The notes beneath the pieces are model-generated. The model was not told the origin of the DNA. It did no database searches and saw only the letters and a program-made list of their open reading frames with translations. The position numbers and the translations under genes are program-made. A stretch of 64,000 nt of DNA from Neoechinorhynchus agilis (lineage: Eukaryota; Animalia; Acanthocephala): positions 8,472,784-8,536,783 of the forward strand of contig CM121341.1 in assembly GCA_051530055.1 (NCBI GenBank). The letters are read 5' to 3'. Positions 17,733 to 61,239 of this stretch are shown in pieces. How positions within the stretch are numbered: position 1 is the stretch's first letter; every line of letters begins with the position of its first letter.

Positions 17733-18028
17733 AAAGAAGTAAAACCAGTAATGGATATTTTGTTCTTTAAAAGAATCTACGATTATATCATTTTATTAGG
17801 CACAAAGTTCAAGGCGACTTGGTGTAAATGTGTCAGAAAGAAATTAGATAAAGACGATGCCGCTGATGGAATTGTGATAATGGAATCGTACCAACTTTTT
17901 AACATTCAGGATTTAATTCTGCTTGCAAACATCAATGGAAAGTATTTTCACCAGTGAATCTTTAGTTAGCCCATAAAAAAAGTTGACTGATTATTAGTCT
18001 CAGAGTTCTACCAAAGTTTGGATGAAAA
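17733..18028 (+). repeat. 296-bp unique cap of the left inverted arm
   Basis: Reverse complement of 60944-61239, identical by eye. Contains the 68-aa ORF 17751-17957. Confidence 0.97.
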
Positions 18029-20293
18029 GAAAGATGAAAGCCTTTATATTTTTGATTAATCGATATCCGGAATTTCGGTACATGACTTAATCTCCAAAAT
18101 CAAAGCAGTGATCTCTGATTGATTTTATTAAACGGACACTGATTGATATTTTCCTAATTGCCTTATAAATTTTCCTCAGCTGCCAGAAAGATGAAAGTCT
18201 TTATATTTTCGATTAATCGATATCCGGAATTCCGGTACATGACTTAATCTCCCAAATCAAAGCAGTGATCTCTGATTGATTTTATTAAACGGACACATTG
18301 ATATTTTCTTAATTGCCTTATAAATTTTCCTCAGCTGCCTGAAAGTTTATATTTGACTCTCCAATTTATTGAAGGTAAAAAGATTTAGCTAAAAAAAGTT
18401 TTTTTTTTTTGAAGATGAAAGTTTTATATTTTCGATTAATCGATATCCGGAATTCCGGTACATGACTTAATCTCCAAATCAAAGCAGTGATCTCTGATTG
18501 ATTTTATTAAACGGACACTGATTGATATTTTCCTAATTGCCTTATAAATTTTCCTCAGCTGCCAGAAAGATGAAAGTCTTTATATTTTCGATTAATCGAT
18601 ATCCGGAATTCCGGTACATGACTTAATCTCCCAAATCAAAGCAGTGATCTCTGATTGATTTTATTAAACGGACACTGATTGATATTTTCTTAATTGCCTT
18701 ATAAATTTTCCTCAGCTGCCTGAAAGTTTATATTTGACTCTCCAATTTATTGAAGGTAAAAAGATTTAGGCTAAAAAAAAGTGGTTATATTTTCGATTAA
18801 TCGATATCCCGAATTCCGGTACATGACTTAATCTCCCAAATCAAAGCAGTGATCTCTGATTGATTTTATTAAACGGACACTGATTGATATTTTCCTAATT
18901 GCCTTATAAATTTTCCTCAGCTGCCAGAAAGATGAAAGTCTTTATATTTTCGATTAATCGATATCCGGAATTCCGGTACATGACTTAATCTCCCAAATCA
19001 AAGCAGTGATCTCTGATTGATTTTACTAAACGGACACTGATTGATATTTTCCTAATTGCCTTATAAATTTTCCTTAGCTGCCTGAAAGTTTATATTTGAC
19101 TCTCCAATTTATTGAAGGTAAAAAGATTTAGGCTAAAAAACAAGTGGTTATATTTTCGATTAATCGATATCCCGAATTCCGGTACATGACTTAATCTCCC
19201 AAATCAAAGCAGTGATCTCTGATTGATTTTATTAAACGGACACATTGATATTTTCCTAATTGCCTTATAAATTTTCCTCAGCTGCCAGAAAGATGAAAGT
19301 CTTTATATTTTCGATTAATCGATATCCGGAATTCCGGTACATGACTTAATCTCCCAAATCAAAGCAGTGATCTCTGATTGATTTTATTAAACGGACACAT
19401 TAATATTTTCTTAATTGCCTTATAAATTTTCCTCAGCTGCCAGAAAGATGAAAGTCTTTATATTTTCGATTAATCGATATCCGGAATTCCGGTACATGAC
19501 TTAATCTCCCAAATCAAAGCAGTGATCTCTGATTGATTTTATAAACGACACTGATTGATATTTTCTTAATTGCCTTATAAATTTTCCTTAGCTGCCTAAA
19601 AGTTTATATTTGACTCTCCAATTTATTGAAGGTAAAAAGATTTAGGCTAAAAAACAAGTGGTTATATTTTCGATTAATCGATATCCCGAATTCCGGTGCA
19701 TGACTTAATCTCCCAAATCGAAGCAGTGATCTCTGATTGATTTTATTAAACGGACACATTAATATTTTCTTAATTGCCTTATAAATTTTCCTCAGCTGCC
19801 AGAAAGATGAAAGTCTTTATATTTTCGATTAATCGATATCCGGAATTCCGGTACATGACTTAATCTCCCAAATTGAAGCAGTGATCTCTGATTGATTTTA
19901 TTTAACGGACACTGACTGCTATTTTCCTAATTGCCTTATAAATGTTCCTTTGCTGCCTGAAACTTTATATTTGACTCCCCAATTTATTGAAGGTAAAAAG
20001 ATTTAGGCTAAAAAACAAGCGGTTATATTTTCGATTAATCGATATCCCGAATTCCGGTACATGACTTAATCTCCCAAATCAAAGCAGTGATCTCTGATTT
20101 ATTTTATTAAACGGACACATTAATATTTTCTTAATTGCCTTATAAATTTTCCTCAGTTGCCAGAAAGATGAAAGTCTTTATATTTTCGATTAATCGATAT
20201 CCCGAATTCCGGTGCATGACTGAGTCTCCCAAATCAAAGCAGTGATCTCTGATTGATTTTATTAAACGGACACTGATTGCTATTTTCCTTATA
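18029..20293 (+). repeat. Satellite array, about 13 monomers of about 157 bp and about 205 bp
   Basis: gaaagatgaaag anchors at 18029, 18186, 18565, 18927, 19288, 19443, 19802 and 20163 give periods of about 155-157 and 359-379. Confidence 0.98.
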
Positions 20294-21025
20294 ACTTTAA
20301 ATCAATCCTTATAGGATTTTGTACCTTAAAGCATACTGGTGACCATGTTGAAGGTTGTCGGTTTAAATTCCTAGAAATCTTCGCTTTAAAAAAGTGAGCT
20401 AACAAGTCGACGAACTGAGTGCGTCGCTGCTGTTTTATTCGTTGATCTTTACGTTTAGAATACAATTTTTATGGATCGAGGACGACAGCCGGCTGATATA
20501 TATACTTGTTATCTATAATGCCAATCGTCTTGTCCATCGTACTTCTAATCTGGACGTTGTTGTGTTCTTTTATTTATGTCGTAAATTCGTCTGCTGTTAC
20601 GCTCCTTTTCCATCGAGACATGCTGCCTATTTGATTTTGTTAAATCAATTGAAGAAGTCGTTCAAATTTCTCATCTTTTATTTATGTTTTGCAATATACA
20701 TTGTCTCGAGTCGAGCTAAGCCAGTGGCTGCTTAATTGACCTACGATCTTATAACCAATTTCTTTTTTCATGATTCCTACTAAGGCACAGATCGGACAGC
20801 TTCATAAATTGTTGCTGCAAAAAACTGACATAAAGGAAATGATTTTTCATTTAGCGGTTCTCGATGTATAGTTTTCATTGGGTAGTTTTTTGGAGACCAA
20901 AATTACGCTTTATGTATTTCTATTATTTTTAATACTCGTAAGCTTGATTTGTTTTAAAGTGCCACAAAGTCTGGGTCTTTTAAAGGTCTTAGACATTTAG
21001 CATCTTCATGTTCCGTACCCTTTAG

Positions 21026-24000
21026 ATGGTTCGCTTTCGTATAGGTTGGTGCCGATTCCGTCAATCGTCAATACTGTTCGCTACATTGGTCATTACGGTC
21101 GTAATCGTAATTTTCATGTCTTTTAACCACTTCACTGGAAGTGAAGATAGCTTTTGGCCAGTTCCTATGAAAGTTCGTCAACCTCAATTTGAAGCAATAA
21201 CGCAAGATTTAATGGAAAATAACAGTGTTTTGACACGCAAATACCCTTTTATGGATCGGAATAAACTAGGAAACTACGAAGAAGTATCGTTCATGGAGAT
21301 TAAAGCAATCGGTGCAGGTGGTGTTGGTGTGGAATTGGATGAAAGTGAAAAGGATGCTATTGACGCGAGCGTTGCCGAGTATGGTCTTAACGCACACTTG
21401 AGCGATATGATATCAATGGATCGAAGAATCCGGGACACTCGTCATCCAGAGTAAGTGTGGCTCACTATAGTGTAAATGTATCCATTTTAAAACTCTAGGA
21501 ACTCGACCAAATGAAAATTATTAGCAAATTTCCTTCTTAAGCTTTATAATGCGATTTTTGCCTATTTTTTAATTGAGGTTGTAGCAAGGTTAGACTTGAT
21601 TTTGGTGTCATTTTCGGTGATTCTTACACTTGTTTCGCATCTTGTTTCCACTGGAACATTATATCTTCATTGTTCGTTGGCGAATCCTGTCCCCGGTGTT
21701 GTCGCTACTTATTTATATGAGAAATATTTCACAAGGAAACTTACCAACAATGGCGACTGAAGAGGCAAGGAAAACCTTGTGAAATATTTCTCAAATAAAC
21801 AGGATTCGCCAACGTACAATCAAATTCACCCCGAGGACAATGATATATGACGTTATATCTTTAATTAGAACGCGATAAACTCTTTTATTTGTTATCACAA
21901 GGTAAAAACGATCGATTTTAATAGAAACCTGTTCCATTATTCGCTTCATTATGTTAAACTACGTTTCATTGGTGTGTTTGAAAAGGTGCAAATATTGGCA
22001 TTATCCGGAGATATTGCCGACCGCAAGTGTCGTGATCGTATTTTTCAACGAAGCATGGTCAGTTATCGTTCGAACGGTTCATAGTGCAATCAATACGTCT
22101 CCAAAGCACCTAATGCGTGAAGTTATTTTAGTAGACGATGGAAGCACTTACGGTAAGCACTTCTCCTCACTAATTTCTTACTTAAAAAAAGATACGTCGA
22201 AAAATTTGACGGAATACATTAAACGATGGCGAGGCAAGGTTAAACTAATCATAAATCCACACCGAATGGGTCTTATTAAAGCCAGGATTATTGGGGCTCA
22301 GCACGTTTCTAGCGACGTTATTGTCATACTGGACGCTCACTGTGAGTGCGTTACAAACTGGCTACCTCCTCTTCTTGCTGAAATTTCAAATAATCGGTAA
22401 GCATTTTCAGCTTTATTCTGGCGCTTTGAGTACTATTAAAAAAAAATAGACGCACAATGGCTATTCCTATCGTAGATGGACTCGATTGGCGGACATTTCA
22501 ACATCGAAGTATTTACGGCGAACAACCATATCGCGGAATTTGGGAATGGGGATTTCTGTACAAAGAAACACCAGTATCGAAACGAGAATATAGTCGCTGG
22601 GATCACATTACTCGACCGTATTGGTAAGCTTCGAAACTTGTAATTCCGTTCTATTGTTTGAAGGTCACCTACTCATGCAGGTGGACTGCTAGCCATTGAT
22701 GCCGGCTGGTTCAGGGAATTAGGAATGTATGATGAAGGAATAAAAATTTGGGGAGGTGAACAATACGAACTTAGTTTTAAGGTTTGGTCCACGGATTATG
22801 GTGGTAGCATGAAGAATATCGTGTTTAGGTTTGGTTATGTGGAGGAAATGTCAAATGGGTACCTTGTTCAAGAGTCGCCCATGTGTACAGGGGACCGAGA
22901 AGAAAATATTTTCCTTTTCCTCACGCACAAAATCATCAGACTGATCGGGTAAGCGGATGACTTTTTAGCTAATATTTATGAGAAAAAAATTTGTTTTGAA
23001 ATTTAGTTCCAAAGTGTACATTTGTCGCTTTTTATTCAATTTCTTTGGTAGAAATCTGCTAAAGATGGACATTAGCTAGCGGAGCTAAAGATGTATTATC
23101 TATAAAGAATGATTGGGCGAGAATTGAAACCTCATTTAAAAAATCACAACCTTATATTTTAATGCAATATTCTTAACTTGCGCGTATAAGACCTTTTTTG
23201 AAGAGCTAATTTTGCACAATTTTAATGTAAAACGAGATTGCCATTTCGATTTGATGGCTAATTTTGGAAAGCCCAAACACGAATTGGGTTTTAGTTGAAC
23301 AATTTTGCCCACACTTAAATTTTTTTTAACGGCACCACGATTTTCGTTTCAATTTACTCCTCAATGACTTAATCATGATCAGAATCACCTTCGTCTATCG
23401 GAAGTATGGATGGACGAGTACAAAAAGTACTTTCGAATTCGGGAACCAGCTACGGTGCAACTTGATTTCGGTGATGTTTCGGACCAGATATCTCTAAGAA
23501 ATAGACTAAACTGTACATCATTTGATTGGTTTATGAAAAACGTAGCCTACGACATGTTCAGAAAATTTCCTCTTCCATCTGAGAACGTTGCTTGGGGTGA
23601 GGTGAGCTGAACCATTATTTTGTTTCTCTCTTTGCTAAAGCTTATTATCAGTGCAAAAACATTGGAGCTAACGTTTGCCTCGATCAACTTGGAGCCGGAT
23701 TCGGAGATGTGATCGGTGTTTATACCTGCCATAACCAAGTTTGCCTTTATTTGATAAAATACCTTTTAATTGTGTCTTGTGCAGTTATTCAGATTAAATG
23801 CCAAAGGCGAAATCTCATCTGGAGAGCACTGTTTCCATTCACGATCCGATGGAACCGTTAGAAAGAAGTTCTGTCTTGATAACGAAGGCATTTGGAATCC
23901 AGTTGGAGAATGGATGTACGATAATGTAAGTACCATTAATGTTTAAGTTTAAAATATATCCTGCTCCGTAAAAGGTCACTCTAAAGTTAACATCGAAGGT

Positions 24001-24106
24001 AACTGGTAAATGTCTGGAGGCGAGCCAATCCAGTCTTCAGATGAAGAAATGTGTTGGCGGGAAAAAGGATCAAATGTGGACATGGAAAAATTTCTACTAC
24101 AACTAA
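21026..24106 (+). CDS. GALNT7: Polypeptide N-acetylgalactosaminyltransferase (GALNT7/gly-7-like), multi-exon
   Basis: Type II TM N-terminus; [16 protein letters not shown]; LDAHCEC (DxH motif); [12 protein letters not shown]; [12 protein letters not shown]; WMDEYK; ricin-B lectin exons ending [11 protein letters not shown] at 24104-24106. GT-AG introns were checked at several junctions. Family assignment is sure, subfamily is likely. Confidence 0.9.
21660..21850. mobile_element. Small foldback (MITE-like) element in GALNT intron 1
   Basis: Nested inverted pairs gttggcgaatcctgt/acaggattcgccaac and gagaaatatttcacaagg/ccttgtgaaatatttctc. A related gaaatatttcac hairpin lies at about 12696-12740. 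Confidence 0.65.
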
Positions 24107-24429
24107 AAAAATCCCATGTTATTTTTGTAATATTTGCAAAAATGAACGACCCTGTTGTCTTCTTTGTATTCGTCGTAAAATCCATCTTATTGTTTAACGA
24201 TATTTCTTAAGATACCCGAGAGCCTATAAACGATCGTCCTTGTGGCCAACAAACATTATCAAATGTAACCTGTACGTTCCGTGCTTTCGTTTCCGAAGAC
24301 CAATCTTCTTTGTTTACCTTTTTTTGCAATGTTTGTTTTTTGACCATTTGTATTTATCGATTTTTTAACCTACGAATTGTAAATTTCTTAATATACTTTC
24401 TTGGGCGTAGACTAAAAACGAATTTTTAA

Positions 24430-24880
24430 AATGTTTGAAAATTGAATTGTTCATGTTTGCATTTGGGATAAAAATTAAAAGAATTTATTGATTCCGAGTG
24501 GTTTCGAAGGTACAATCTCGTACGCGTTTATCAAGGTTGTTTAAATGTCGTTTTCGCACTTGAAAGTATAAGATTGTTTCGAAACCAATCGGAATTAATA
24601 AATCCTTTTAATTTTTATGCCAGGTGTAAACAATTTTTAGAATATTGTTTATTTTCTCTATTAAGTTTCTTTTATTTTATTCCTAAACTACAATACAGTT
24701 CATGCATTAAGGCGTTTGTTAACGAATGGAAAGTAGAAATGTTTGAAGACTGAATTGTTCATGTTTGTATCTGGCGTAAAAATTAAAAGGATTTATTGAT
24801 TTACAACCTTGATAAACGCGCACAAGATTGTGCCAAAATAATGGAAACACTAAATCCTTTTAATTTTTACGCCAGAAAGT
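24430..24880. mobile_element. Two related foldback elements in tandem
   Basis: taaaaattaaaag(a/g)atttattgat and aaatccttttaatttta arms recur in inverted orientation in both 24440-24620 and 24745-24875. Confidence 0.6.
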
Positions 24881-25911
24881 AAAGGTTTGAGACCGAGTAG
24901 AGCGTTTATCGGGTAGGATTAATGAGATTTTTATGCTCACAAAATATTAAATATAGGATATTTTAACGGATTTTCTACCAATCACTCAAGATCTTAACTG
25001 GTTGTGTTTCGTACATCGTTAAATCAACAACAAAAAATGGTTATTTTTTAGAACTTCTTTTTTATACTAATTAAAGAAGCTAAGAAGTTGTATCATTTAG
25101 GACTTAGTTTCATTTAAAACACCGCAGCTTGTAGTAGCGATGGTAGACTGGTGATTTTCATTAATACTCGCTAAATTGTCTCGTGAATAATATTGATCGT
25201 TTAAAAATTGAAAGTGATGTAGCGCTCGTTCCAACCGCGGATGTGGAAGGTCCACGGCTACTCCAAATATGTGTTTTTGGAGAGCAGTTCCATTTTTAGT
25301 GTGGTTCCTTTTGTTTCCTTTCGACTATTGTTGTTTTTACGATATATGAACCCATAGTTCCTTTCATAAATCGACGTTAAAGGTTTTTATTTATAAATCA
25401 AGGAACTATTTCAACACTTAATTGTTGATCTCGATCGTGTTCGTGATGTAAAATAGTGCAAATTGCTAGTGGCAACTCACCACTGTCTTATATTTGTTCA
25501 ATAATCTGATTCGGTTTGCAAATTCACGCTTTTAGGAAAAGTACCATTACCAGTTTGTTATCAAGCAAAATTAGATTTTTAATTTGATATTTAGTGGCAA
25601 TAAAAGACTTTTTAAGTGTCTTCCTAGATTTGAATTCTTGACAATTACCAATTTAATTCATAACCTAAATCTTAGACTCTCGCGTACTTTTTTGGGCGTA
25701 TTACAAAAAAATTTGGTTTCAGAATCGTACAAAAGGGATTTTGATTTATCTCATTGGTTTAGTTATGTAAGCAACCTCATTTACTTTTTCGTATGCCCTG
25801 TTGTGCTGCTGCTGTCCATATACAACAGCGTGGTTAATTCTTGAATGACTCACCATTGTATTTATTGAGTTCATTTAACCTTTTTCAGATCACAAAAAAG
25901 GTGTCCAGACA

Positions 25912-29035: not shown

Positions 29036-30425
<1,390 letters not shown>

Positions 30426-31922: not shown

Positions 31923-32066
31923 ATACTCGTATTTTTTCCACAGAATGTGACCCTAAATAACGCGATTTGTTTTAAACAAGAAATTTAATCTACAAAAAAA
32001 TACAGATTGATCAGTATTGCCAAGCGAAGGAGTCTGCAACAATCCATTGATAGCGGCTTATTTCAG

Positions 32067-39700: not shown

Positions 39701-42700
39701 TGTCCTAAGTGTCAAGTATTCATGGACAGACTGTATCGTACATTTTATATCTTTCCAGTGCAATCAAATAAATTCAAAATCAAATTCAAAACAGTGGTTG
39801 ATTGACGCCCTAATAAAATAAGAGTGGCAGGCATATGGGTCCGTTTTTTTAATTTACAAAAATATATTCGCTATTAATTTGTAGCTGCTGCAATCAAATA
39901 AATTCAAAATCAAATTCAAAACAGTGGTTGATTGACGCCCTAATAAAATAAGAGTGGCAGGCATATGGGTCCGTTTTTTTAATTTACAAAAATATATTCG
40001 CTATTAATTTGTAGCTGCAAATGTATCTAAATTGTATTTTAGAAGAAAAGAAGCGGTATTGCATTCTTAATCTAATTATAAAAAATAGGACAAGCGTATT
40101 AAATCGCTTTCTCCGCTACAAATAAAGTGGGGATTTTTTGGCTTGTGATTATTTTCACCAAAAGTATAATAAATTAAAATTTTAAATATAATACTTGCGA
40201 AATATAATCAAGCGATTATTTTTGTTTACTTTGCCCCTCAAAGACAGGCAACCTAACATCGTAATTTGCATTGTTATATTCCTTAGATTAAAAAACGCAT
40301 ATTTCAATCGTTAATATGCGATTACAAAAGATCCACCTTTTTCGTGAATTCATTTTTAAAATAAAAATCTATGGTAAAATCATTGAGTTTTGAAAATACG
40401 TTTATTTCACAAGTATAAGATGTGTTTAAGTGTGGCCTTTTTCATGGCAGATAATTTTATTTCTTTGGCAAACTTCTGAGTTTGTACGAATCCCTGAAGA
40501 TCCTCACTCCGGGAGACGGGATAGAATTTACCGGCTAACCAGACTTCAAAAAATAGAAATACAAGAGTCGATCTAGCTTCTTTAAAAAAACGGAAATCAA
40601 TCAAAAGGAGGTTTTCGGCTTATTTCGCTAATTACGTGTTTCAACTTTATTAAAGTGCCAAAATGTTAATTAATTGTGTCTTTTGTTAAATGGCATATTC
40701 CCCATGGAATCCGTTTATACCAAGCAGACGAGAATGCGTTTTAAACCCAAAAAACGGCCCATACCGCAACAGAATAACGCTTCTTGAGGTTCTCGGTGTG
40801 AGGCTTCATATTTCCCTTCTAGCGAATGCTGAGTCTATCAATTAGCCTCCAGGGGTTCCATCTAGATTACTGATCACATACCTCGCACAAGTCCGCAATG
40901 CTATTTTTCATAATATAATCATAATTTGGCTTGAGGGTATTCCAGAAATCGTCGTTGAGTTTCAAGATTTCAATAGAAGAAAGACTAGAGTCCTTTTTGG
41001 GGCCATCTCTTGAATCAATATGATTATAGAACATGATTTCCACTCTATGAGTCATTTTATAAATATCTAAAAGTGTTACCCGTGTTTGCCAGAAAAAGAT
41101 CGACGTTTTTTTATCTATAATCAAAAAATTTGACTAGAATTTCTTTGAAGAAACATCACAAAAGTGTCTTTTTTGAGGCATTGGAATAAGCTTAGTAATC
41201 AGAATGCTCGCACTTATTTGTATGCGTTTCAAGTGAAAATTAAATAAAATTGGAGAAAAATACTTTAAAACCTAGTTACAACTTTAATCAAAATCATGAG
41301 TTTAGAATGAGAGTTTCTTGGAAGTAGGAGACGTTGATTAGCGGAATTTGCTACATGGCTGTAAATGTCGTCAGTTCCCTTCGTTCAAATTTAAACGCTC
41401 TAATAAAAGATAATAAAACTCTTATTCTAAACTCATGGTTTTTGATTAAAATTGTAACTATGCTTTAAAATAATTTACTCTTTAACGTTCACATTACTTT
41501 TAAAACATTTTTATTAGAGCGTTTAAATTTGAACGAAGTCAGGTAATCAACGTCGCCTGGTTCCAAGAAACTCTTATTCTCACTTCGATAGAACCTCGGA
41601 GCTTAGCAGTCTAATCAAAAGTACGATCGTGGAAAGCAGCAGAACAGACAGGCTATCAATATGTTTACTCAAGCTTGGATTTCGATTTCTCTTTACTCGC
41701 TCGCCAATAAAAATTCTAGATTAATAATGTTAACTCTAAAAGTGTGTTAATTGTCGAGAAATGAAGATTGAATTTCAAAAATTATACAGGTTTAAAAAAA
41801 CTCTAAAACGCTTTAAAGTATGCATTTTAAGCGCTCAGTGGAAGCTCAAACCCGATGAGGCGTTTATAACGAATTTGGATTTTATTCAAGGATTTAAAAG
41901 TACATTCTAAAACAACTCCTTCTTTCACCGTATGTATCCGTTATATTCCGGCTTCGTAAATCTCGAATTTTGTAGTTTAAAGCAGTAAAAGACGCAGATA
42001 CTATAGACCGAATATTTTTGCATAATCGATTGAGAGCTTCTAAAATAGCAAAAAAACATACGTTGAGAGGACCCAACAAAAAGGGAACAATCTACGTGGG
42101 TTTTTTTGTTAAAAGGTTAATAATACTTAAAGGGAAAAAACGTGTTCTTTCCTTAGATCTTTTTTAATTTGATTAAGTCTAAACGTGCTCAAGACTTCTA
42201 TTCGGATTTAGGAAGTCGAATAAGCTAATTCGAGCGATGTCGTGTCTCCAATCTCTCTCTCTCGTGGCCTTTGGTACCAAGATAATCATGCAAAGCCATT
42301 CTCGTGTAGATTTCGGCAAATATGAAACTCTATCAGCAACCTTCGACCACACGTATAGTCCGTTTTAATGCAATTGATAAGCGAGCCTGAAGAGTTGATG
42401 AGAATGTAAATATGGCGGTGAATACGAAGGAGGAACATAAACAAACGAGACCGTTAGCTATTTATTTCAATTAGTTTCGGCTGCGATGGGATAAATCTTT
42501 TCTGCTAGGCACGTTTTTCTAACATTTAAAAGTAAATAATTTTTGCTTGTTTTGGCATAGGATAGTTTAAAAAAATGGAACCATTTATTCCTTTTTAGAT
42601 TTGGAAGCGAAGCAGGCCATGAATAAATGCACTTGACTTGATATAAAATGTTATATCTGCAGATCAACGCTTTAAACCTTGCATGATAATGGTCTAAAAT

Positions 42701-44163: not shown

Positions 44164-45153
44164 ATGTCCAACTTAAACGGCATTCTTGAAAAGTAAGAAC
44201 TCAGAAATGCATTCAAAGTCCACGAAAATAGCATTATAGTCCCGATGAACAATCCTATCTTGATCTGGTCGGTCGGATTATATCTGAAGGCAGTGTTCGC
44301 GAGAATCGAACGGGGATCAATACACGATCGATATTTGGAGCGCAACTTCGTTATAATCTTAGTGAAGGTTGGATTGCTTCCTTTTTAAATTCCACTAAAA
44401 GTTCATTGGCTTCTAGACACAATGCCGGTTTTCACGACAAAGCGCGTCTATTGGAAAGGCGTTTTGGAAGAGCTGTTTTGGTTTATTGGAGGTAAGACCG
44501 ATAGTCGATTATTATCGGCTAAGAATGTTCACATCTGGGACGCTAATGGTAGCAGAGAATACCTTGACTCGATTGGACTCAAAGATCGCGAGGATGGAGA
44601 CCTTGGTCCAGTGTATGGATTCCAATGGAGGCATTTTGGTGCCCAGTATACTGATTCCCACGCTGACTATCGTGAAAAAGGAGTTGATCAACTTAAATGG
44701 CTTATTTCGGAAATAAAAAACAATCCGACAAGTCGAAGACTAATAATGTCGGCATGGAATCCCATGGATTTAAACGAAATGGCACTCCCTCCGTGCCACG
44801 TAATGTGCCAGTTTTACGTTCAATCAAACGAACTTTCATGTCAGATGTATCAAAGATCGGCTGATATGGGTCTTGGCGTTCCGTTCAATGTGGCCAGTTA
44901 CTCACTCTTAACTCACTTAATCGCTCACGTAACAGGACTTCGTGCTAAGGAGTTTATCCATTCTATTGGAGATGCTCACGTCTACGAAAACCACATTAAA
45001 CCTCTCGAGGAACAGTTAAAGCGAAAACCTTTGCGGTTTCCACGCTTAAAAATCACCAATGATTGTACGGATATTGATTCTTTGAAACCCGAACACGTCG
45101 AACTTGTGGGTTACAAGCCCATGGCTAAGATTCAAATGGACATGGCCGTATGA
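44164..45153 (+). CDS. TYMS: Thymidylate synthase, 3 exons (44164-44192, 44240-44367, 44417-45153)
   Basis: [10 protein letters not shown]|[10 protein letters not shown]...[21 protein letters not shown]|...[17 protein letters not shown]...MALPPCH...[14 protein letters not shown]...GDAHVYENH...MDMAV*. The 47- and 49-nt GT-AG introns keep the frame. Confidence 0.98.
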
Positions 45154-48915: not shown

Positions 48916-49229
48916 TCTTGTACGCCTTTATTAAGATTATTTTTGTTTATCTAAACCAACAATTCAATCTTCAAACGTTATAATTTATGCCTGAATTTTT
49001 TTCCTGAGACTGGATTATTTTATAAAAAAGTTTACTTTGGTTATGGACACTGCGCTCGTGTTCTTTGGCGAAAAACGGAGTGTACCTTGTTCTAAAAACG
49101 TCTCTGAATAAGTTAGAGTGCACGTCGCGATCAGCTATTTAAGGACTTTGAAATAAAACGTAAAACCACATAACTTAAAAAACGAGCGTAATATCGCCGT
49201 CTCCACAAAGGTTGCAGCGGCGTTTAAAG

Positions 49230-50755
49230 ATGATAAATTCGTTGAAATCAAAAGAAATCATTGATCGCGAGTGGAAATATGGCTGCCACAATTATCACCC
49301 CCTTCCAGTTGTTCTCAATTGCGGTCAAGGTTTGTCCACACTTGAAGCCTTTAATGAAATCATTCTTTTAGGAATCTTTGTCTTCGATCTGGACAACCGG
49401 CGATATTTCGATTTCCTTAGTGGATACAGTGCCCTCAACCAAGGTCACTGCCATCCTAAGATAACTGCAGCTCTCAAGGACCAAGCAGATAAACTAACCC
49501 TTACGTCTCGTGCTTTTTATAACGACAAATTGAGTGATATGGAGCAATTTTGTTGTCAATTGTTTGGCTACGATAAACTTCTTCCAATGAACTCCGGTTG
49601 TGAAGGGTCGGAAAGTGCAGTGAAGATTGCTAGAAGATGGGGATATGAGATAAAAGGCATTCCTGATAACGAAGCGATCGTCGTATTTGCGGAAGGGAAT
49701 TTTTGGGGGCGTTCTATTGCTGCCGTGTCCTCTTCCACGGATCCAGATTCTTTTAAGCACTATGGTCCATATTTGCCTAAATTCGAGATAATAAAGTATA
49801 ATGATCTAGAAGAGTTAGAGGTTTGTTCTCAATCGTTATCAATGAACACTTTCACAATCCACTAAGGATAAATGCAAGAATCCAAATGTTTGTGCTTTTA
49901 TGATTGAACCGATTCAAGGGGAGGCAGGTGTAATAATCCCAAATGAAGGATACTTAAAGGGAGTCCGTGAACTGTGCTCAAAGTATAATGTACTCATGAT
50001 CGCTGATGAGATACAAACGGGATTAGGGAGAACTGGAAGGTATGAAACTAAAATCAAGAATTAGGCCAGTAGTTTTAAGATTTTTTGAAATTAAAGTCAC
50101 GAAAACTCTCGGTTTCAATTCAGAGTTTTGATGTGCGCATTTAAGGTTGATATGCTGCGACCACGAAAATGTGAAACCTGACATCCTCGTACTTGGAAAG
50201 GCAATGTCTGGCGGTTATTACCCGATTTCCGCAGTATTGGCCAACGACAATGTCATGAATGTTATTACACCCGGAACTCATGGCTCAACTTATGGTGGAA
50301 ACCCACTTGCTAGCGTTGTGGCAATTGCTGCTTTAAAAGTACTTCAATGGCATTTTTTACGTTAATAAACAAAAAATTTAGTGTTTAGTTGAAGAGAATA
50401 TGATTGAGAATAGTGAGTGTATGGGATTGAAACTGAGAGAAGGATTGGAAAAAATGAAAGGACGTGTGATCGTCAATGTCCGCGGAAAGGGTCTAATGTG
50501 TGCCATCTCCCTTGCACCGGGTATAAACGAATCGGGGTTTAAAAAGTCTTTATGGCTTATTTTTCAGGTTTCGACGCGTTCAAATTCTGTCTGAAACTTA
50601 AAGACGAGGGACTTTTGGCTAAACCAACTCACGGTGTTCACATCAGACTTTGTCCACCGCTGATCATTAACGAAGAGCAGATAAAAGAAAGCTTAGACAT
50701 TATCAACAAAGTGGTCGAATACGTCTCAAGCAATCAGACTGAATTTAGAGCTTAA
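49230..50755 (+). CDS. OAT: Ornithine aminotransferase, multi-exon
   Basis: [13 protein letters not shown]; [17 protein letters not shown]; [22 protein letters not shown]; EPIQGEAGV; [12 protein letters not shown]; LGKAMSGG (PLP lysine); [10 protein letters not shown]; GLLAKPTH...IRLCPPL. Confidence 0.97.
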
Positions 50756-50790
50756 AGGACATTAAAAAATAATTAGTCTTTATTGAACGA

Positions 50791-51740
50791 TTAGATAAAA
50801 AGTCCTGGGGGTACTCTATACTTTTCATAGGCATTCTTTTCAATGTCTATCTGAGTATCTTTAATCACATAAACGCATTCCAATTCTAATTTAAACGGGA
50901 CCTGTGATGTTATCCATAAGACTGATTGTTATCCCAGTCACGGAGCTCATATACTTCTTTTCCGGTTGGATATCTTTTAGTACGCCTTTATTAGCAAGAG
51001 CCAGTTTAGCAAACGGAATCCGGACGTCCTGCCAATAAGGACCACCGCGAGTGTGAAGAGGATATACATACATCTCATGAGCAAGCTCTTGATAATAACC
51101 TGGCATGTTCAATATAAGAGTATAACATCGTCCATCTCCACGTAATCGGAGTCCAATGTGAGTGTACGCCGCCCATTCGAACTTTTTATTCCCAATACGG
51201 AAAGGCATTCGATCTCCTTTGGCAACCATTGCAGCGAGACCGCGTACTTTAATAGGTTCAATGTTTTTTTCGCTACTGATGGCTTGTGAGAGGTCGAAAT
51301 CGTATCCTCCATCCAAGTATCCGCTGAAAATAAGCCAACGTTTGTTTGGGGAAAGTTCTACTCTTGCCCAAGACTCTCCAATTCGCTCTGGTCTATCGGA
51401 TGCAACCATCCAATTGTTCAAAGGTTCATCCGTACCGTCGAATGTGTACACCGGAGTACAGTCACCGTGGTAATGAATTAATCTTTATTGGTAAGGGATA
51501 AAGGAAAAAACAAGCTGAAAGTTACGTAAAAGTACCGAGGAGTGCTCGTAAACACTTCTTTCAATTCTTTACATAATTTCATTGTATCGCCCCAAAGAAG
51601 TTTGATTGTCTGTAAGATCCGGACGTCGATGGGAATCGAACTGATTTCATCTTTTATCTCCTTTGCACCCTCGATGCCTATGGAGCGGACGATAGGTTAG
51701 CCGACAAAGCTCTTTTATACGCCAATATATAGGGGCATTT
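50791..51740 (-). CDS. NDUFAF1: Complex I assembly factor CIA30/NDUFAF1, with a 1-nt frameshift at about 50897-50899
   Basis: IGLRLRGDGRCY; YPLHTRGGPYWQDVRIPF; ISLMDNITGP, then FKLELE...NAYEKY...GLFI* in the shifted frame. The start exon is uncertain. Confidence 0.85.
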
Positions 51741-53915: not shown

Positions 53916-54339
53916 AATAAGACTTTCTCTATAAGTTTTGGTAGACATAGCAAAAAAACCCTTAATATCGAATCCATTTTAGGCATGTTATATGCATAGC
54001 GATTATCTTTTTTTTTCAAAACCAAAATCACCTTTAAGTGGACAAAAAAGAGAAGAATGCCAACACTCGAGGGACATACCATTTCCGTGAATAAAGGAAC
54101 ACTCACAACTTCAGCTATTTCTGTTGCACGCATTGTGTTTGGGTAACAATCTGTCTGCCATTTCCCACGTGGATTTAGCATCCGCCATCAGATTCCACTG
54201 AGTAGGATGTATACCGTTAAATCTAGAAAATCTTCATTCAGAAATACTCACTTCTAAGTGGCGGTCAGAACAGAATCTCTTCAATTTTTATCTATAGCTC
54301 GCATAATAAAATAAGCGCAAACCAGAGTAGTTGGTGCGA

Positions 54340-56667
54340 TTTAAAAGAAGAGCAAGTCTTTAGAAACTAAATTTCATTTTAACTATCCATTCCATGATAG
54401 ACATACAAAAATATCGATTAGAGTTTCTCCGATACAAAAAAGTGATATTCTAATTGATCTCTTCTAGAAAACGGCTTTATTATCGCACAATGAACTTCTG
54501 GACAGACTGATGCCAATGGACTTGAGAAACATTTCTCAATCAGAATTGGAGTCCAAAACTCGGGCAATATTTGAAGAAAATGCAAAGAGGTGAGATTTTG
54601 GTTCTCCGAATGTCTATCATTAATCAGTTATCGTTAAAGAAGGTTTGAAGCGATGAAAAGTCACTTGGGCGAATATTTGGTCAAGCAGAATAAGAGACGA
54701 ACACGATCATGGGTAATCGATAAGCATCCAAATATGACATTTAAGAAAAAACGATATTCGTCCATTGGAAACACTAACACACTTAAGTACGCGGAGGAGC
54801 ATAACTCGTTTTTTATCGTTATTTTATAGCTCTTGCTGTTTTGAACGATGCCAGTCGACTAAGCCGACGGCGCAACTTTCCCTAATAAATTGGAACGATC
54901 TTTCAAATGAACAACGTTCTCAACTCATTGGATACACGGGTTTATTTTAGATCAAGTCGACTGAAAACGAGAAAAAACTTTTCTTGGGTAGGTTTACCGA
55001 AATGGAATGCAAGTGGACAATACCTCGGATGCGACCGTTGTAAGGATTTAGTGGACCAAGTAATAAATCAGTCTTCCAAATGTAACCAAAAGGGTAAGGA
55101 CAGTCATAATAAGTGACTTATAAAGCTGTGCGCTAGATGAACACCAAAAGGAAATGGCACTTTCGACAATGATGGTTTGTCAAGATTCTTTAAAACTAAA
55201 GACACGTAGGCTAAATCATCGTTTTACAATTCGACCTGATTTTGTCCTTTTCAAACCCAGTTGAATCCACAATTCCGTTTACTATCGAATCACTTGCATT
55301 GACATCCAAAGAGGATCCTTCATATGTACACCGATCAGCTTTTCGTGCAGTTAAAAAGACTACTCGCAATGAATGGGAGGAACCTATTATTTCGGATCAA
55401 CTAACGAATTGCACACTTCCGTTCGAGTACTTAAATGAAACCGTTAAAAATCAAACAAATTATATCAAACCGACTACTAATCATCCAAAATGCGACTATC
55501 AATTACAGATTAGTAAAGACTTTACTCAACATTTGCCAACATCAATGCTGGAATATTTTTACTGGCAATGTATGAGCCCAGGAAGTAAGTATTTCACTTT
55601 TTCTTTGAAAATGGGTTGCATGGTCGATTGAAGAACAAGTATCTAGAAACACGACTGCTTTAGATGGTCACTAACTCGATTTTTGTCTTTCAAGCAACCT
55701 TGTGTAAAAATCACCAAATCGAATTTGGAACTTAAATGCAAGTTTTTTTAGTTTCCCTAGGGTGTCATTTTGAACAAGGTGACTCAAGAGATTTTTAAGT
55801 GATTCAACAATACCCATTTAAGGAACTGTTTTGAACACAAAATGAACGAGAGCGCAGAATTTTGGTCCCTTAGTGAGAAAAGGATTAAATTAGAATGAAA
55901 TGCTGTTTGATTTTCTCATCTATGAAACTTCTTAATTCTCGCGATCCCTATAACTATGAATTATAGTTTCAGAAACAGAATTCGATTTCTCTACTCTGAC
56001 CTACTAGAAACTGTTCAAAAATCACGATTTTCTTCGCTCGCTCCTATCGTATTAGTTGCACCGCAACGGCAATGCCAAAAGACAAGCGTTTCGTCAATTC
56101 TTTATCATGAAAAAAGGCAGGAACGGTTCAGGGCGCATAGGGAACTCGGTGGTGTAGTGAGGTCTTTTGCGACGACCACTGAGCAAAGCCTCCAATGCCA
56201 AAAAAACCCTTTTAGAACAGTTTCCTTCGAAAACAATGAACATGGACGGCGGTTCCGGTGGTGCCGAAGTATCAAGGAGAAAGCGAAAGTCTCAACCGAA
56301 GAAGCATCCTAACCATAGAGAGAGGTGGAATAATGGCGAAAGCAATGTGGATAACGGAAAAATCACAAAACCTTTGTTTTGGAAATATTTTCTGGGACCG
56401 CCGATAGACGTCCCACGGTCACAACTGCAACACAGAGAGTCGAGTGTTAAAAGTCCGGGGATGGATTTCGTAAAGGAAGAGGAGGACGGTGAGGAATTTC
56501 ATAGGAGGTTTCAGGAAACAATCGCAATGAGAATTTTAAGTGATTTGCCCATTAGTGATGAGTACTACCGAGATCTAAATGAACGGGTAAAATCGAAAAA
56601 CTCAACTAGACTGCTACAATGGACCCGTGTCCTTAGTGGTGGCGGATCAAGCGGTACAAATAATTAA
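54340..56667 (+). CDS. Unidentified multi-exon gene, possibly secreted or membrane; 5' exons may extend to about 52300
   Basis: AG/GT-bounded short exons (for example ELLDRLMPMDLRNISQSELESK, RFEAMKSHLGEYL, GLPKWNASGQYLGCDRC) and ORFs 55242-55631 and 56167-56667. Several N-X-S/T sequons and Cys residues. Confidence 0.4.
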
Positions 56668-56831
56668 CTGAAAAATAGAGAATAAATTGAGCGAAAATTG
56701 ATTAGCATGGAGGGGCTTTTGTTGACTAGGAAATAAAAAGGACCCTAAAGTTTCTAGTATTTAGAATCAAAAGACAAAACAAATAAACCAGCTTCTAAAA
56801 ACAATAACCACCAACCTTCCCACACTCGACC

Positions 56832-57255
56832 GGACCCGTGATCTACTCTATCATTCGGCGTAGTCGTCGACCGTCATCGTCAACCGTCTCCTCCGGATCC
56901 GTAATCCACATCCACTTCCGGATCCGTCATCCACTTCAAACTCAGGATCCGTCATGTACTCCAATTCCTGATCTGTCATTCACTCAAAATTTCCGGATCC
57001 GTCATTCATCCACTTCAAATTCCCGATCCGTCATCTACTCCACATTCCGGATCCGTCATTCATCTACTCCAAATTCCGAATCCGTCATTCATCAACTCTA
57101 ATTCCGGATCCGTCATCAACTCAAAATTCCGGATTCCTCATTCATCCACTCCGAATTCCGGGTCCGTCATCAACCTCTCCGGATCCGTCATACACTCGCA
57201 ATTTAAAGATCCGTCATCCACTCAGAACTCCGGATCTATTATCCACTCCGAATTT
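56832..57255 (+). repeat. Minisatellite, about 15 units of about 24-29 bp (consensus near aattccggatccgtca(ttca)tccactcca)
   Basis: The ggatccgtca core recurs at about 25-30 bp spacing. Confidence 0.92.
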
Positions 57256-57264
57256 CCCAATAGG

Positions 57265-57475
57265 AGACGGCGAAACTTGGCATTAAACGCTGCGAAATGC
57301 GAGATTTTAATGATGAACGGCGAATATGAGGCGTCCAGACAAATTATCGTTAAAGATTTTCAGAACTTGGCCCGGGGATAGAATTGATCACTCCAGGCCG
57401 GTTGAGGGTTCTAGGTGCCAATCTTCGACCGCAACTTTCAATGCACGAGGCTCTGTTCCTGATCAAGAAAATATC
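57265..57475 (+). mobile_element. Internal CRE-type RT fragment abutting the satellite
   Basis: gcgaaatgcgagatttta...acaaattatcgttaaagattttcagaacttggcccgg...ctgttcctgatcaagaa matches the reverse complement of about 14470-14740. Confidence 0.85.
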
Positions 57476-60400
57476 AATCAGTGTCCGTTTAATAAAATAA
57501 ATCAGAAATCACTGCTTTGATTTGGGAGACTAAGTCATGTACCGGAATTCCGGATATCGATTAATCGAAAATATAAAGACTTTCATCTTTCTGGCAGCTG
57601 AGGAAAATTTATAAGGCAATTAGGAAAATAGCAGTCAGTGTCCGTTTAATAAAATCAACCAGAGATCACTGCTTTGATTTGGGAGACTCAGTCATGCACC
57701 GGAATTCGGGATATCGATTAATCGAAAATATAACCGCTTGGTTTTTTAGCCTAAATCTTTTTACCTTCAATAAATTGGGGAGTTAAATATAAAGTTTTAG
57801 GCAGCTAAGGAAAATTTATATGGAAATTAAGAAAATATTAATCAGTGTCCGTTTAATAAAATCAATCAGAGATCACTGCTTTGATTTGGGAGATTAAGTC
57901 ATGCACCGGAATTAAGGACATCGATTAATCGAAAATATAACCGCTTTGTTTTTTAGCCTAAATCTTTTTACCTTCAATAAATTGGAGAGTCAAATATAAA
58001 CTTTTAGGCAGCTAAGAAAAATTTATATGGAAATTAAGAAAACATTACTCAGTGTCCGTTTAATAAAATCAATCAGAGATCACTGCTTCGATTTGGGAGA
58101 CTAAGTCATGTACCGGAATTCGGGATATCGATTAATCGAAAATATAAAGACTTTCATCTTTCTGGCAGCTGAGGACAATTTATAAGGCAATTAGGGAAAT
58201 ATTAATGAGTCCGTGTAATAAAATCAATCAGAGATCACTGCTTTGATTTGGGAGATTAAGTCATGTACCGGAATTCCGGATATCGATTAATCGAAAATAT
58301 AAAGACTTTCATCTTTCTGGCAGCTGAGGAAAATTTATAAGGCAATTAGGAAAATATCAATCAGTGTTCGTTTAATAAAATCAATCAGAGATCACTGCTT
58401 TGATTTGGGAGACTAAGTCATGTACCGGAATTCGGGATATCGATTAATCGAAAATATAACTGCTTGTTTTTTAGCCTAAATCTTTTTACCTTCAATAAAT
58501 TGGGGAGTTAAATATAAAGTTTTAGGCAGCTAAGGAAAATTTATAAGGCAATTAAGGAAATATCAATCAGTGTTCGTTTAATAAAATCAATCAGAGATCA
58601 CTGCTTTGATTTGGGAGATTAAGTCATGTACCGGAATTCCGGATATCGATTAATCGAAAATATAAAGACTTTCATCTTTCTGGCAGCTGAGGAAAATTTA
58701 TAAGGCAATTAAGAAAATATTAATGTGTCCGTTTAATAAAATCAATCAGAGATCACTGCTTCGATTTGGGAGATTAAGTCATGCACCGGAATTCGGGATA
58801 TCGATTAATCGAAAATATAACCACTTGTTTTTTAGCCTAAATCTTTTTACCTTCAATAAATTGGAGAGTCAAATATAAACTTTCAGGCAGCGAAGGAACA
58901 TTTATAAGGCAATTAGGAAAATATCAATCAGTGTCCGTTTAGTAAAATCAATCAGAGATCACTGCTTTGATTTGGGAGATTAAGTCATGTACCGGAATTC
59001 CGGATATCGATTAATCGAAAATATAAAGACTTTCATCTTTCTGGCAGCTGAGGAACATTTATAAGGTGAAAATATCAATCAGTGTCCGTTTAGTAAAATC
59101 AATCAGAGATCACTGCTTTGATTTGGGAGATTAAGTCATGTACCGGAATTCCGGATATCGATTAATCGAAAATATAAAGACTTTCATCTTTCTGGCAGCT
59201 GAGGAAAATTTATAAGGCAATTAGGAAAATATCAATCAGTGTCCGTTTAATAAAATCAATCAGAGATCACTGCTTTGATTTGGGAGATTAAGTCATGTAC
59301 CGGAATTCCGGATATCGATTAATCGAAAATATAAAGACTTTCATCTTTCTGGCAGCTGAGGAAAATTTATAAGGCAATTAGGAAAATATCAATCAGTGTC
59401 CGTTTAATAAAATCAATCAGAGATCACTGCTTTGATTTGGGAGATTAAGTCATGCACCGGAATTCGGGATATCGATTAATCGAAAATATAACCGCTTCTT
59501 TTTTAGCCTAAATCTTTTTACCTTCAATAAATTGGGAGTCAAATATAAACTTTCAGGCAGCTAAGGAAAATTTATAAGGCAATTAGGAAAATATCAATGT
59601 GTCCGTTTAATAAAATCAATCAGAGATCACTGCTTTGATTTGGGGTCATGTACCGGAATTCGGGATATCGATTAATCGAAAATATAAATGCTTTGTTTTT
59701 TAGCCTAAATCTTTTTACCTTCAATAAATTGGGGAGTTAAATATAAAGTTTTAGGCAGCTAAGGAAAATTTATAAGGCAATTAAGAAAATATCAATCAGT
59801 GTTCGTTTAATAAAATCAATCAGAGATCACTGCTTTGATTTGGGAGATTAAGTCATGTACCGGAATTCCGGATATCGATTAATCGAAAATATAAAGACTT
59901 TCATCTTTCTGGCAGCTGAGGAAAATTTATAAGGCAATTAGGAAAATATCAATGTGTCCGTTTAATAAAATCAATCAGAGATCACTGCTTTGATTTGGGA
60001 GATTAAGTCATGCACGGAATTCGGGATATCGATTAATCGAAAATATAAAGACTTTCATCTTTCTGGCAGCTGAGGAAAATTTATAAGGCAATTAGGAAAA
60101 TATCAATCAGTGTCCGTTTAATAAAATCAATCAGAGATCACTGCTTTGATTTGGGAGATTAAGTCATGTACCGGAATTCGGGATATCGATTAATCGAAAA
60201 TATAAAGACTTTCATCTTTCTGGCAGCTGAGGAAAATTTATAAGGCAATTAGGAAAATATCAATCAGTGTCCGTTTAATAAAATCAATCAGAGATCACTG
60301 CTTCGATTTGGGAGATTAAGTCATGTACCGGAATTCGGGATATCGATTAATCGAAAATATAACCACTTGTTTTTTAGCCTAAATCTTTTTACCTTCAATA

Positions 60401-60943
60401 AATTGGAGAGTCAAATATAAACTTTCAGGCAGCTAAGGAAAATTTATAAGGCAATTAAGAAAATATCAATCAGTGTCCGTTTAGTAAAATCAATCAGAGA
60501 TCACTGCTTTGATTTGGGAGATTAAGTCATGTACCGGAATTCCGGATATCGATTAATCGAAAATATAAAGACTTTCATCTTTCTGGCAGCTGAGGAAAAT
60601 TTATAAGGCAATTAGGAAAATATCAATCAGTGTCCGTTTAATAAAATCAATCAGAGATCACTGCTTTGATTTGGGAGATTAAGTCATGTACCGGAATTCG
60701 GGATATCGATTAATCGAAAATATAACCACTTGTTTTTTAGCCTAAATCTTTTTACCTTCAATAAATTGGAAGTCAAATATAAACTTTCAGGCAGCTGAGG
60801 AAAATTTATAAGGCAATTAAGAAAATATCAATGTGTCCGTTTAATAAAATCAATCAGAGATCACTGCTTTGATTTTGGAGATTAAGTCATGTACCGAAAT
60901 TCCGGATATCGATTAATCAAAAATATAAAGGCTTTCATCTTTC
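57468..60943 (-). repeat. Satellite array, about 20 monomers, same family as 18029-20293 in inverted orientation
   Basis: Reverse complement of the 157/205-bp monomers. Counted from gatatcgattaatcg anchors. Confidence 0.98.
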
Positions 60944-61239
60944 TTTTCATCCAAACTTTGGTAGAACTCTGAGACTAATAATCAGTCAACTTTTTTTATG
61001 GGCTAACTAAAGATTCACTGGTGAAAATACTTTCCATTGATGTTTGCAAGCAGAATTAAATCCTGAATGTTAAAAAGTTGGTACGATTCCATTATCACAA
61101 TTCCATCAGCGGCATCGTCTTTATCTAATTTCTTTCTGACACATTTACACCAAGTCGCCTTGAACTTTGTGCCTAATAAAATGATATAATCGTAGATTCT
61201 TTTAAAGAACAAAATATCCATTACTGGTTTTACTTCTTT
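60944..61239 (-). repeat. 296-bp unique cap of the right inverted arm
   Basis: Reverse complement of 17733-18028. Both encode the same peptide MDILFFKRIY...KYFHQ. Confidence 0.97.

What the first reader, a model, noticed from the sequence alone, without database searches (positions are those of the whole stretch)
17733..61239. Giant inverted satellite-capped arms enclosing about 37 kb of housekeeping genes
Seen: 17733-~20293 and ~57468-61239 are reverse complements. They share an identical 296-bp unique cap and identical private variants in the first monomer (aaagcc, ttttgattaat, gaatttcgg, ctccaaaat), then run into arrays of about 13 versus about 20 monomers with different variant order. The left array has one extra short unit right after the cap, so the arms are not a literal copy. 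Between them lie GALNT7, GNB1, a KASH-like gene, TYMS, OAT and NDUFAF1. Established: Drosophila Foldback elements have tandem-repeat TIRs, and pairs can mobilise large host segments; long inverted repeats also drive inversions. Inference: a composite foldback-like element, an invertible gene cassette, or a satellite-bounded chromatin loop or rearrangement unit. No TSD or transposase is visible.
Basis: partly seen in the sequence, partly recalled or inferred. Interest (0 to 1): 0.9.

Follow-up and report, generated by a model that had tools for sequence, protein, structure and literature searches.

The report
Young inverted duplication bracketing gene block
A 37-kb block of ordinary housekeeping genes in a thorny-headed worm genome really is flanked by two mirror-image copies of a short unique piece plus a local tandem repeat, but these are a recent two-copy duplication private to this locus (probably left by an inversion), not a jumping element.

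Summary
Arms 17733-20289 (+) and 57465-61239 (reverse complement) share a 296-nt unique cap and most of the first monomer at 407/407 identity. They then run into 13 versus 20 monomers of 155-157 or 203-207 nt, and both stop at the same monomer phase.

Reads show the pair is real and private to this locus. The cap has 2.1-2.2 times the depth of both flanks in two DNA data sets. Total array depth matches the 33 assembled monomers. The right outer junction is present in DNA and in RNA libraries of four separate worms.

There is no clean target-site duplication in any configuration, no transposase domain, and no further copy. The foldback or composite-transposon reading is therefore not supported.

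The best reading is a young inverted low-copy duplication (about 0.5% private divergence). It most likely arose with a roughly 40-kb inversion by staggered breaks or a related one-step event, and it is now a substrate for homologous flipping of the block. Whether both orientations exist could not be tested, because only short reads were served.

One internal junction of the left array (T12 run, 18399-18410) is not supported by reads.

The scan's first readers noted at least seven similar inverted duplications elsewhere in this genome, all unchecked. A genome-wide census is the interesting follow-up.

The parts
17733..18028 (+). Left cap: 296-nt unique segment, outer end of the left arm
   Evidence: 100% identical to 60944-61239 in reverse complement (I5). 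Read depth is about 42 against about 19-21 in the flank. No similarity to the monomers above shuffles.
18029..20289 (+). Left array: 13 monomers (short 155-157, long 204-206, one 222), last one truncated
   Evidence: Anchor spacing and monomer listing. It ends at the same phase as the right array.
18333..18452 (+). Doubtful junction inside the left array (long-unit tail, T12 run at 18399-18410, restart of a short unit)
   Evidence: Depth is 3.4 against about 20 expected, and the reads there carry 9 or more other differences. It holds the only homopolymer of 11 or more in the window. The published assembly used ONT gap closing (PMC12690905).
20290..57464 (.). Enclosed 37,175-nt block: GalNAc-transferase exons (about 20403-22949 +), G-beta (29363-30308 +), thymidylate synthase (44389-45150 +), class-III aminotransferase/OAT (49179-49862 +), CIA30/NDUFAF1 (50894-51484 -), plus unassigned ORFs, a 25-29-nt minisatellite (56892-57254) and a short reverse-transcriptase relic (57262-57415)
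   Evidence: Pfam hits. Self-BLAST and tandem-repeat results.
57465..60943 (-). Right array: 20 monomers, last (innermost) one truncated at the same phase as the left array
60944..61239 (-). Right cap, outer end of the right arm
   Evidence: I5. The junction 61239|61240 is held as 31-mers by one DNA run and four RNA runs of separate worms. An RNA contig of X3 covers the cap with 25 letters that do not fit the left flank (record 19).

Best explanation
The two arms are a young, locus-private inverted low-copy repeat. One discrete segment, a 296-nt unique piece plus the whole adjoining local tandem array, was copied once in inverted orientation to the other end of a 37-kb gene block.

The most likely origin (inferred) is a single rearrangement that couples duplication with inversion. 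This could be staggered breaks on either side of the segment with fill-in and end joining, as in the Ranz et al. 2007 model, or staggered sister-chromatid breaks or a replication template switch.

After the duplication the two arrays changed unit number and order by unequal exchange (13 vs 20 units), while the point-mutation clock has barely ticked.

The consequence (inferred from established NAHR biology) is that the arms are a good substrate for intrachromosomal homologous exchange that flips the block. They share 407 nt of perfect identity and kilobases at 93-99%. Because the arms are mirror images, every gene keeps the same kind of neighbour in either orientation, so flipping should be nearly neutral.

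Shown: the arms exist, are two-copy, are discrete and are young. Not shown: that an inversion happened, or that flipping occurs.
For: The copy number is two.
- X8 Illumina depth is about 19.4 in the outer flank, about 41.9 in the cap and about 18.8 in the inner flank.
- X1 contig k-mer depth is 104.8, 221.9 and 128.7 for the same three regions.

The satellite is private to the locus. Mean array depth is about 49, against about 51 expected if only the 33 assembled monomers exist at 88% identity or more. No copy lies elsewhere in the window.

Both ends of the duplicated segment coincide in the two arms, and homology stops abruptly. Flank alignments score no higher than shuffles.

The duplication is young.
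- 94 minor monomer variants are shared between the arms.
- Only about 6 (left) and about 22 (right) events are private, about 0.5% overall.
- At that rate about 2 differences are expected in the identical 407 nt, so observing 0 has P of about 0.14. No gene conversion is needed to explain it.

The right outer junction is present in DNA and in four separate worms' RNA libraries. The left outer and inner junctions are present in X1 contigs (records 1 and 8).

The topology argument is as follows. With two caps, two array ends and a repeat-free block, the only alternatives are the two flip isomers. Both of them are 'inverted arms around the block'.

Inverted duplications of otherwise single-copy sequence at inversion ends are documented for 17 of 29 Drosophila inversions (PMC1885836).
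Against: No outgroup or second assembly was available (one search found only GCA_051530055.1), so an inversion is not demonstrated. A duplicative insertion of the segment without inversion fits equally well.

The inner boundary of the duplication coincides to the nucleotide with the natural end of the array. That is a coincidence under random staggered nicks, unless array edges are fragile. It would be natural for an element with defined termini.

The Drosophila duplications of this kind were at most 1.9 kb, whereas these arms are 2.6-3.8 kb, although array size may have grown since.

The best array diagonals are only 93-98% identical, so much reshuffling must be assumed. Part of it could be assembly noise, since the consensus comes from ONT reads of a pool of 50 worms.
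Confidence: 0.6

Rival explanations
1. Composite foldback-like transposon: two FB/Tetris-type ends (unique outer domain plus tandem-repeat domain) mobilised 37 kb of host genes as one unit.
For: The anatomy of each arm resembles a foldback TIR, with an outer unique domain followed by tandem repeats. Tetris has a flanking domain plus 220-bp repeats (PMC4079207). The arms are inverted and have sharp outer ends.
Against: The cap is exactly two-copy and the satellite is confined to this locus. There is no clean TSD: the best composite match is a 5-mer offset by 1 and 2 nt, with chance about 0.02 per comparison and five comparisons made. Tetris has 8-10-bp TSDs. No transposase domain appears in about 57 ORFs scanned. 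The 'middle domain' would hold at least five essential single-copy genes at normal depth.
Confidence: 0.05
2. Two separate insertions, in opposite orientation, of a rare non-autonomous element made of cap plus array with defined termini.
For: Both ends of the two arms coincide exactly, as expected for an element with fixed ends. Earlier notes of this scan describe satellite-carrying, inverted-repeat-bounded small elements in the same genome (unchecked).
Against: There are only two copies in the genome, both within 44 kb of each other and identical over 407 nt. No TSD flanks either arm: 5-mer with offset on the left, 3-mer on the right. The two ends of one arm show no terminal inverted repeat. 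No Helitron-type ends are visible in the sequence.
Confidence: 0.1
3. The arms are real, but the drawn linkage or orientation is partly an assembly product. The left array contains a scaffold or gap-fill join, so the orientation of the block, or the unit count, is arbitrary or mixed in the pooled sample.
For: The T12 junction at 18333-18452 has about 3x depth instead of about 20x and is not matched by reads. The published assembly used pooled ONT reads, instaGRAAL scaffolding and TGS-GapCloser.
Against: The window holds no N runs. Total array depth fits the assembled length, about 5.3 kb estimated against 5.7 kb assembled. All four outer and inner junctions that could be checked exist in reads or contigs. 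Even if the join is wrong, the only alternative is the flipped isomer, which keeps the inverted bracket.
Confidence: 0.15
4. The paired arrays have a selected function, for example paired boundary or looping elements, a promoter module for the adjacent GalNAc-transferase gene, or a source of complementary transcripts.
For: 31 of 33 monomers keep a 12-nt perfect palindrome, and 15 keep a second one next to it. Neither occurs elsewhere in the window. RNA contigs of X3 run from the last left monomer into the GalNAc-transferase gene at 14-30x, against a background of 0-5x.
Against: There is no Rfam match. RNA depth over most of the arrays is near zero. The arrays vary freely in unit number and order. 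Nothing links the arrays to regulation, and there is no conservation data.
Confidence: 0.05

Closest known systems
Inverted duplications at inversion breakpoints (staggered-break model; Ranz et al. 2007, PMC1885836)
   Same: Otherwise single-copy sequence is present twice, in inverted orientation, at the two ends of a chromosomal segment. No transposon family is involved. Only one breakpoint region is duplicated, as in 12 of the 18 Drosophila cases.
   Different: These arms are 2.6-3.8 kb, against at most 1.9 kb (median 321 bp) in Drosophila. The duplicated piece is mostly a tandem array. The copies are far younger, about 99.5-100% identical against about 88%. The inversion itself is not demonstrated here because there is no outgroup.
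Human Xq28 FLNA-EMD recurrent inversion (HsInv0389) between 11.3-kb inverted repeats
   Same: A block of housekeeping genes a few tens of kb long lies between near-identical long inverted repeats. In humans this flips recurrently by NAHR without harming the genes (bioRxiv 10.1101/2020.04.20.051185).
   Different: The arms here are 3-4 times shorter and are built of a satellite, so exchange can also change array length. Flipping has not been observed here.
Foldback transposons (Drosophila FB, Tetris, Galileo) and FB-flanked composite elements
   Same: Each arm has an outer unique domain followed by tandem repeats, and the arms are inverted (Tetris anatomy, PMC4079207).
   Different: There is no TSD, no other copies, no transposase, and 37 kb of essential host genes lie between the arms. 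It looks like a foldback element in layout only.

Membership tests
Foldback / FB-flanked composite transposon | Long terminal inverted repeats with an outer unique domain and inner tandem repeats | tested here: met
   Definition taken from PMC4079207.
Foldback / FB-flanked composite transposon | Target-site duplication flanking the element (8-10 bp in Tetris) | tested here: not met
   The best match is a 5-mer with offsets 1 and 2. The own-arm and exchanged configurations also fail. Chance of a 5-mer or longer is about 0.02 per comparison.
Foldback / FB-flanked composite transposon | Dispersed family: further copies or fragments elsewhere in the genome | tested here: not met
   Cap depth is 2.1-2.2 times the flank in X8 and X1. 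Array depth equals that of the two assembled arms at 88% identity or more. More diverged relatives were not searched.
Foldback / FB-flanked composite transposon | Transposase, or shared termini with an autonomous element | tested here: not met
   No transposase domain appears in about 57 ORFs of the window scanned against Pfam. The only mobile-element hits are reverse-transcriptase relics outside the arms. ORFs shorter than 60 aa and spliced genes were not covered.
Inversion-coupled inverted duplication (staggered breaks) | Two inverted copies of otherwise single-copy sequence at the two ends of one segment, with sharp shared boundaries | tested here: met
Inversion-coupled inverted duplication (staggered breaks) | Ancestral arrangement (outgroup or other haplotype) with one copy and the segment in the opposite orientation | not testable with these tools
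   Only one assembly of the species is in the collections. No close relative's genome is reachable. Only short reads were served.
NAHR flip-flop (recurrent inversion between inverted low-copy repeats) | Inverted arms long and similar enough for homologous exchange | tested here: met
   407 nt at 100% identity and 250-570-nt diagonals at 93-99%.
NAHR flip-flop (recurrent inversion between inverted low-copy repeats) | Both orientations present among individuals or cells | not testable with these tools
   The served runs are 150-nt Illumina reads, Hi-C and Logan contigs. None can span a 2.6-3.8-kb arm, and only one read-laying run was allowed.
Assembly artefact (false duplication or uncollapsed haplotype) | The duplicated stretch has single-copy read depth when reads are laid on one copy | tested here: not met
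   Depth on one copy is about 2.1-2.2 times both flanks in two data sets. The two copies have different, unrelated flanks.

The most novel reading that the evidence does not exclude
This locus is one instance of a genome-wide, ongoing process in Neoechinorhynchus agilis. The scan's first readers noted at least seven other kb-scale, near-identical inverted duplications bracketing gene blocks (six of 12-52 kb, one with no block size given) in this 46-Mb genome. Their arms carry unrelated content (kinase, homeobox, PCNA, satellites). If these are real and, like this one, two-copy by depth, the species would have an unusually high rate of duplication-coupled inversion. That would leave many flip-capable gene cassettes, some perhaps polymorphic or switching within individuals.
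Probability: 0.2. Interest if true: 0.7.

Novelty: new member of a known kind. Interest (0 to 1): 0.4.

Why it matters
On its own this is a clean, validated example of a very young inverted low-copy repeat around a gene block in a phylum (Acanthocephala) whose genome dynamics are almost unstudied. It shows that a local satellite array can be duplicated as a unit and then diverge in structure faster than point mutations accumulate. Its value rises if the other inverted-duplication brackets noted in the same small genome are also real. In that case the worm would be a compact system for studying how inversions arise by staggered breaks and how inverted repeats keep gene blocks flip-capable.

Tried and rejected
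- TSD and TIR tests in all configurations gave only short offset matches at chance level.
- The ORF in the cap (82-99 codons; it extends 25 codons beyond the cap on the right copy, after a plausible splice acceptor) has no Pfam hit and no convincing ESM Atlas neighbour. It cannot be used to say which arm is ancestral.
- An Rfam scan of the left arm and its flanks found nothing.
- I tested whether the reverse-transcriptase relics outside both arms (13412-15604 minus, 62073-63964 plus) are an older, larger part of the inverted duplication. They are only about 50% identical in protein and 67-75% in DNA, so they are separate family members.
- I tested whether the right arm sits inside a retroelement. 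The relic at 57262-57415 does not continue beyond the arm.
- A look-up for a second assembly through an exact protein found only the source record.
- The scan's sequence look-up for the cap and monomer was blank.
- I did not attempt synteny in distant relatives (Pomphorhynchus, Seison, rotifers), judging it too diverged to polarise a 40-kb event.
Full report
**What is there**

The window holds two arms in inverted orientation: 17733-20289 on the plus strand and 57465-61239 as its reverse complement.
- The outermost 407 nt of each arm are 100% identical (pair I5).
- Inward of that, each arm is a tandem array. Counting a conserved anchor motif gives 13 units on the left and 20 on the right.
- Units come in a short form (151-157 nt) and a long form (200-207 nt, with a roughly 50-nt insert), which often alternate as a roughly 362-nt higher-order unit.
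- The order of forms differs between the arms.
- The right first unit equals the head of left unit 1 joined to the tail of left unit 2.
- Beyond all four boundaries the flanks are no more alike than shuffled sequence.

The arms are thus two copies of one discrete segment with shared ends. Refined sizes are 2557 and 3775 nt, with 37,175 nt between them and 43,507 nt in all.

**Is it real?**

Earlier notes of this scan name the genome as Neoechinorhynchus agilis. The source record is GCA_051530055.1, CM121341.1, 19.4 Mb. That fits the published 46.2-Mb assembly with three major sequences (PMC12690905). I did not verify the species independently.

- In Logan contigs of run X1, k-mer depth is 104.8, 221.9 and 128.7 for the same three regions.
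- Reads from every copy in the genome pile onto the one copy given, so the cap exists exactly twice per haploid genome.
- This rules out a false duplication or an uncollapsed haplotype, either of which would give 1x. It also rules out a dispersed family.
- Mean depth over the 18 array bins is about 49. The two assembled arrays alone predict about 51. At 88% identity or more, the satellite is therefore essentially confined to these two arms.

The junctions are also supported.
- X1 contigs cover the left outer and left inner junctions (records 1 and 8).
- A 60-nt query in which every 31-mer crosses 61239|61240 is fully held by X1 and by RNA libraries of four separate worms.

With two caps, two array ends and a repeat-free block, the only possible linkages are the assembled one and its flip isomer. 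The inverted bracket is robust under both, even though the orientation of the block is not.

**One weak spot**

The bin 18333-18452 holds the only long homopolymer of the window (T12 at 18399-18410). It has 3.4x depth instead of about 20x, and the few reads there mismatch it heavily. The published assembly pipeline used pooled ONT reads, instaGRAAL scaffolding and TGS-GapCloser. This junction is therefore probably a gap-fill or consensus artefact, or a rare allele. It does not affect the main conclusion, but it makes the exact left-arm unit count provisional.

**Age**

In an alignment of all 33 units, 94 minor variants are shared between the arms. After setting aside phase artefacts, only about 6 events are private to the left arm and about 22 to the right, which is about 0.5% overall. 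At that rate about two differences would be expected in the 407 identical nucleotides, and seeing none has a probability of about 0.14. A recent duplication of an already heterogeneous array explains the data without invoking gene conversion. The different unit numbers and orders then reflect fast unequal exchange within arrays, and perhaps some assembly noise.

**Is it a transposon?**

Each arm has the layout of a foldback TIR as defined for Tetris: an outer flanking domain followed by tandem repeats, with 8-10-bp TSDs (PMC4079207). The defining tests fail.
- There is no clean TSD around either arm, around the whole 43.5 kb, or in the exchanged configuration expected after recombination between two insertions. 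The best matches are 5-mers with offsets, with chance about 0.02 per comparison.
- There is no further copy.
- There is no transposase domain in about 57 ORFs scanned. Only reverse-transcriptase relics were found outside the arms.
- There is no terminal inverted repeat within an arm.
- The retroelement relics on the two outer sides are inverted relative to each other, but they are only about 50% identical in protein. They are unrelated insertions, not an older part of the duplication.
- Rfam finds nothing in the arm.

**Best explanation**

The structure is a young inverted low-copy duplication of one discrete segment, placed at the two ends of a gene block. It is what the staggered-break model of inversion produces. 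In Drosophila, 17 of 29 fixed inversions carry inverted duplications of otherwise single-copy sequence at their ends, often from only one breakpoint region (PMC1885836).

I favour that or a related one-step event, but the inversion is an inference. No outgroup or second assembly was reachable, and a duplicative insertion without inversion fits equally well. One point sits uneasily with random nicks: the inner boundary of the duplication coincides with the natural end of the array.

Whatever the origin, the arms now have the properties of an NAHR substrate. The close analogue is the human FLNA-EMD block between 11.3-kb inverted repeats, which flips recurrently (bioRxiv 10.1101/2020.04.20.051185). 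Because the arms are mirror images, either orientation leaves each end of the block next to the inner end of an array, so flipping should be nearly neutral. Whether it happens could not be tested.

**Context**

First-stage notes in the same genome describe at least seven other kb-scale, near-identical inverted duplications, with unrelated arm content: s1-288875, s1-038528, s1-039350, s1-255072, s1-282235, s1-255119 and s1-303131. Six are said to bracket 12-52-kb blocks, and s1-303131 gives no block size. All are unchecked, and the 64-kb window limits what can be seen.

If they pass the depth test used here, the pattern points to a general rearrangement process and not to a repeat family. That is the most interesting reading the data leave open.

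**Verdict**

- The foldback-transposon reading is not supported.
- The rearrangement-unit or invertible-cassette reading is plausible but untested.
- This is a new member of a known kind, of moderate interest.

Noticed in passing
window 17133-17252: A roughly 120-nt stretch 480 nt left of the left cap has about 2,775x depth against about 20x for unique DNA, roughly 140 copies. It shows many 'opposite strands' joints and varied loose ends. It looks like a high-copy, palindrome-forming dispersed repeat, MITE- or foldback-like.
   Followed up: no
window 18399-18410 (bin 18333-18452): A T12 run at an aberrant unit junction in the left array has almost no matching Illumina reads. It is a likely gap-fill or consensus artefact, or a rare allele.
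   Followed up: partly
window 18029-20289 and 57465-60943: Almost every monomer carries a perfect 12-nt palindrome (TCGATTAATCGA, 31 of 33 units). Three nt further on there is a second one (CCGGAATTCCGG in 15 units; a one-base variant in 14). Neither occurs elsewhere in the window. They look like paired dimer-binding sites, but nothing was tested.
   Followed up: partly
window 20158-20732: In RNA contigs of run X3, depth is 14-30x from the last left monomer through 20409. It then jumps to about 209x from 20601 into the GalNAc-transferase gene. This suggests a minor upstream start or outron reaching into the array, and a main 5' end near 20601. The contig depths are crude.
   Followed up: no
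window 13412-15604 (-), 62073-63964 (+), 57262-57415 (+): There are three relics of one reverse-transcriptase-bearing retroelement family. The two large ones lie outside the arms, in inverted orientation, and are about 50% identical in protein. The small one lies about 50 nt inside the right arm's inner end, next to a 25-29-nt minisatellite at 56892-57254.
   Followed up: partly
window 39759-40018: A perfect two-copy tandem duplication of 130 nt at 100% identity lies inside the block.
   Followed up: no
window 61018-61314 (-) and 17709-17954 (+): The cap holds an open frame of about 72 codons ending in TGA. On the right copy it continues 25 codons beyond the cap, after a pyrimidine tract and AG. 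It has no Pfam or Atlas relative, and it may be chance in AT-rich DNA.
   Followed up: yes
window 9075-10055 (+): An intronless 326-aa seven-WD40 protein gene (U5 snRNP 40K/WDR5-like by Pfam) lies 7.7 kb left of the left arm. This is a different gene from the G-beta inside the block.
   Followed up: partly
window 5434-5654 vs 8156-8376, and 61372-61444 vs 61558-61630: Further local direct repeats occur outside the arms: 221 nt at 96% identity spaced 2.7 kb apart, and 73 nt at 89% spaced 186 nt apart.
   Followed up: no
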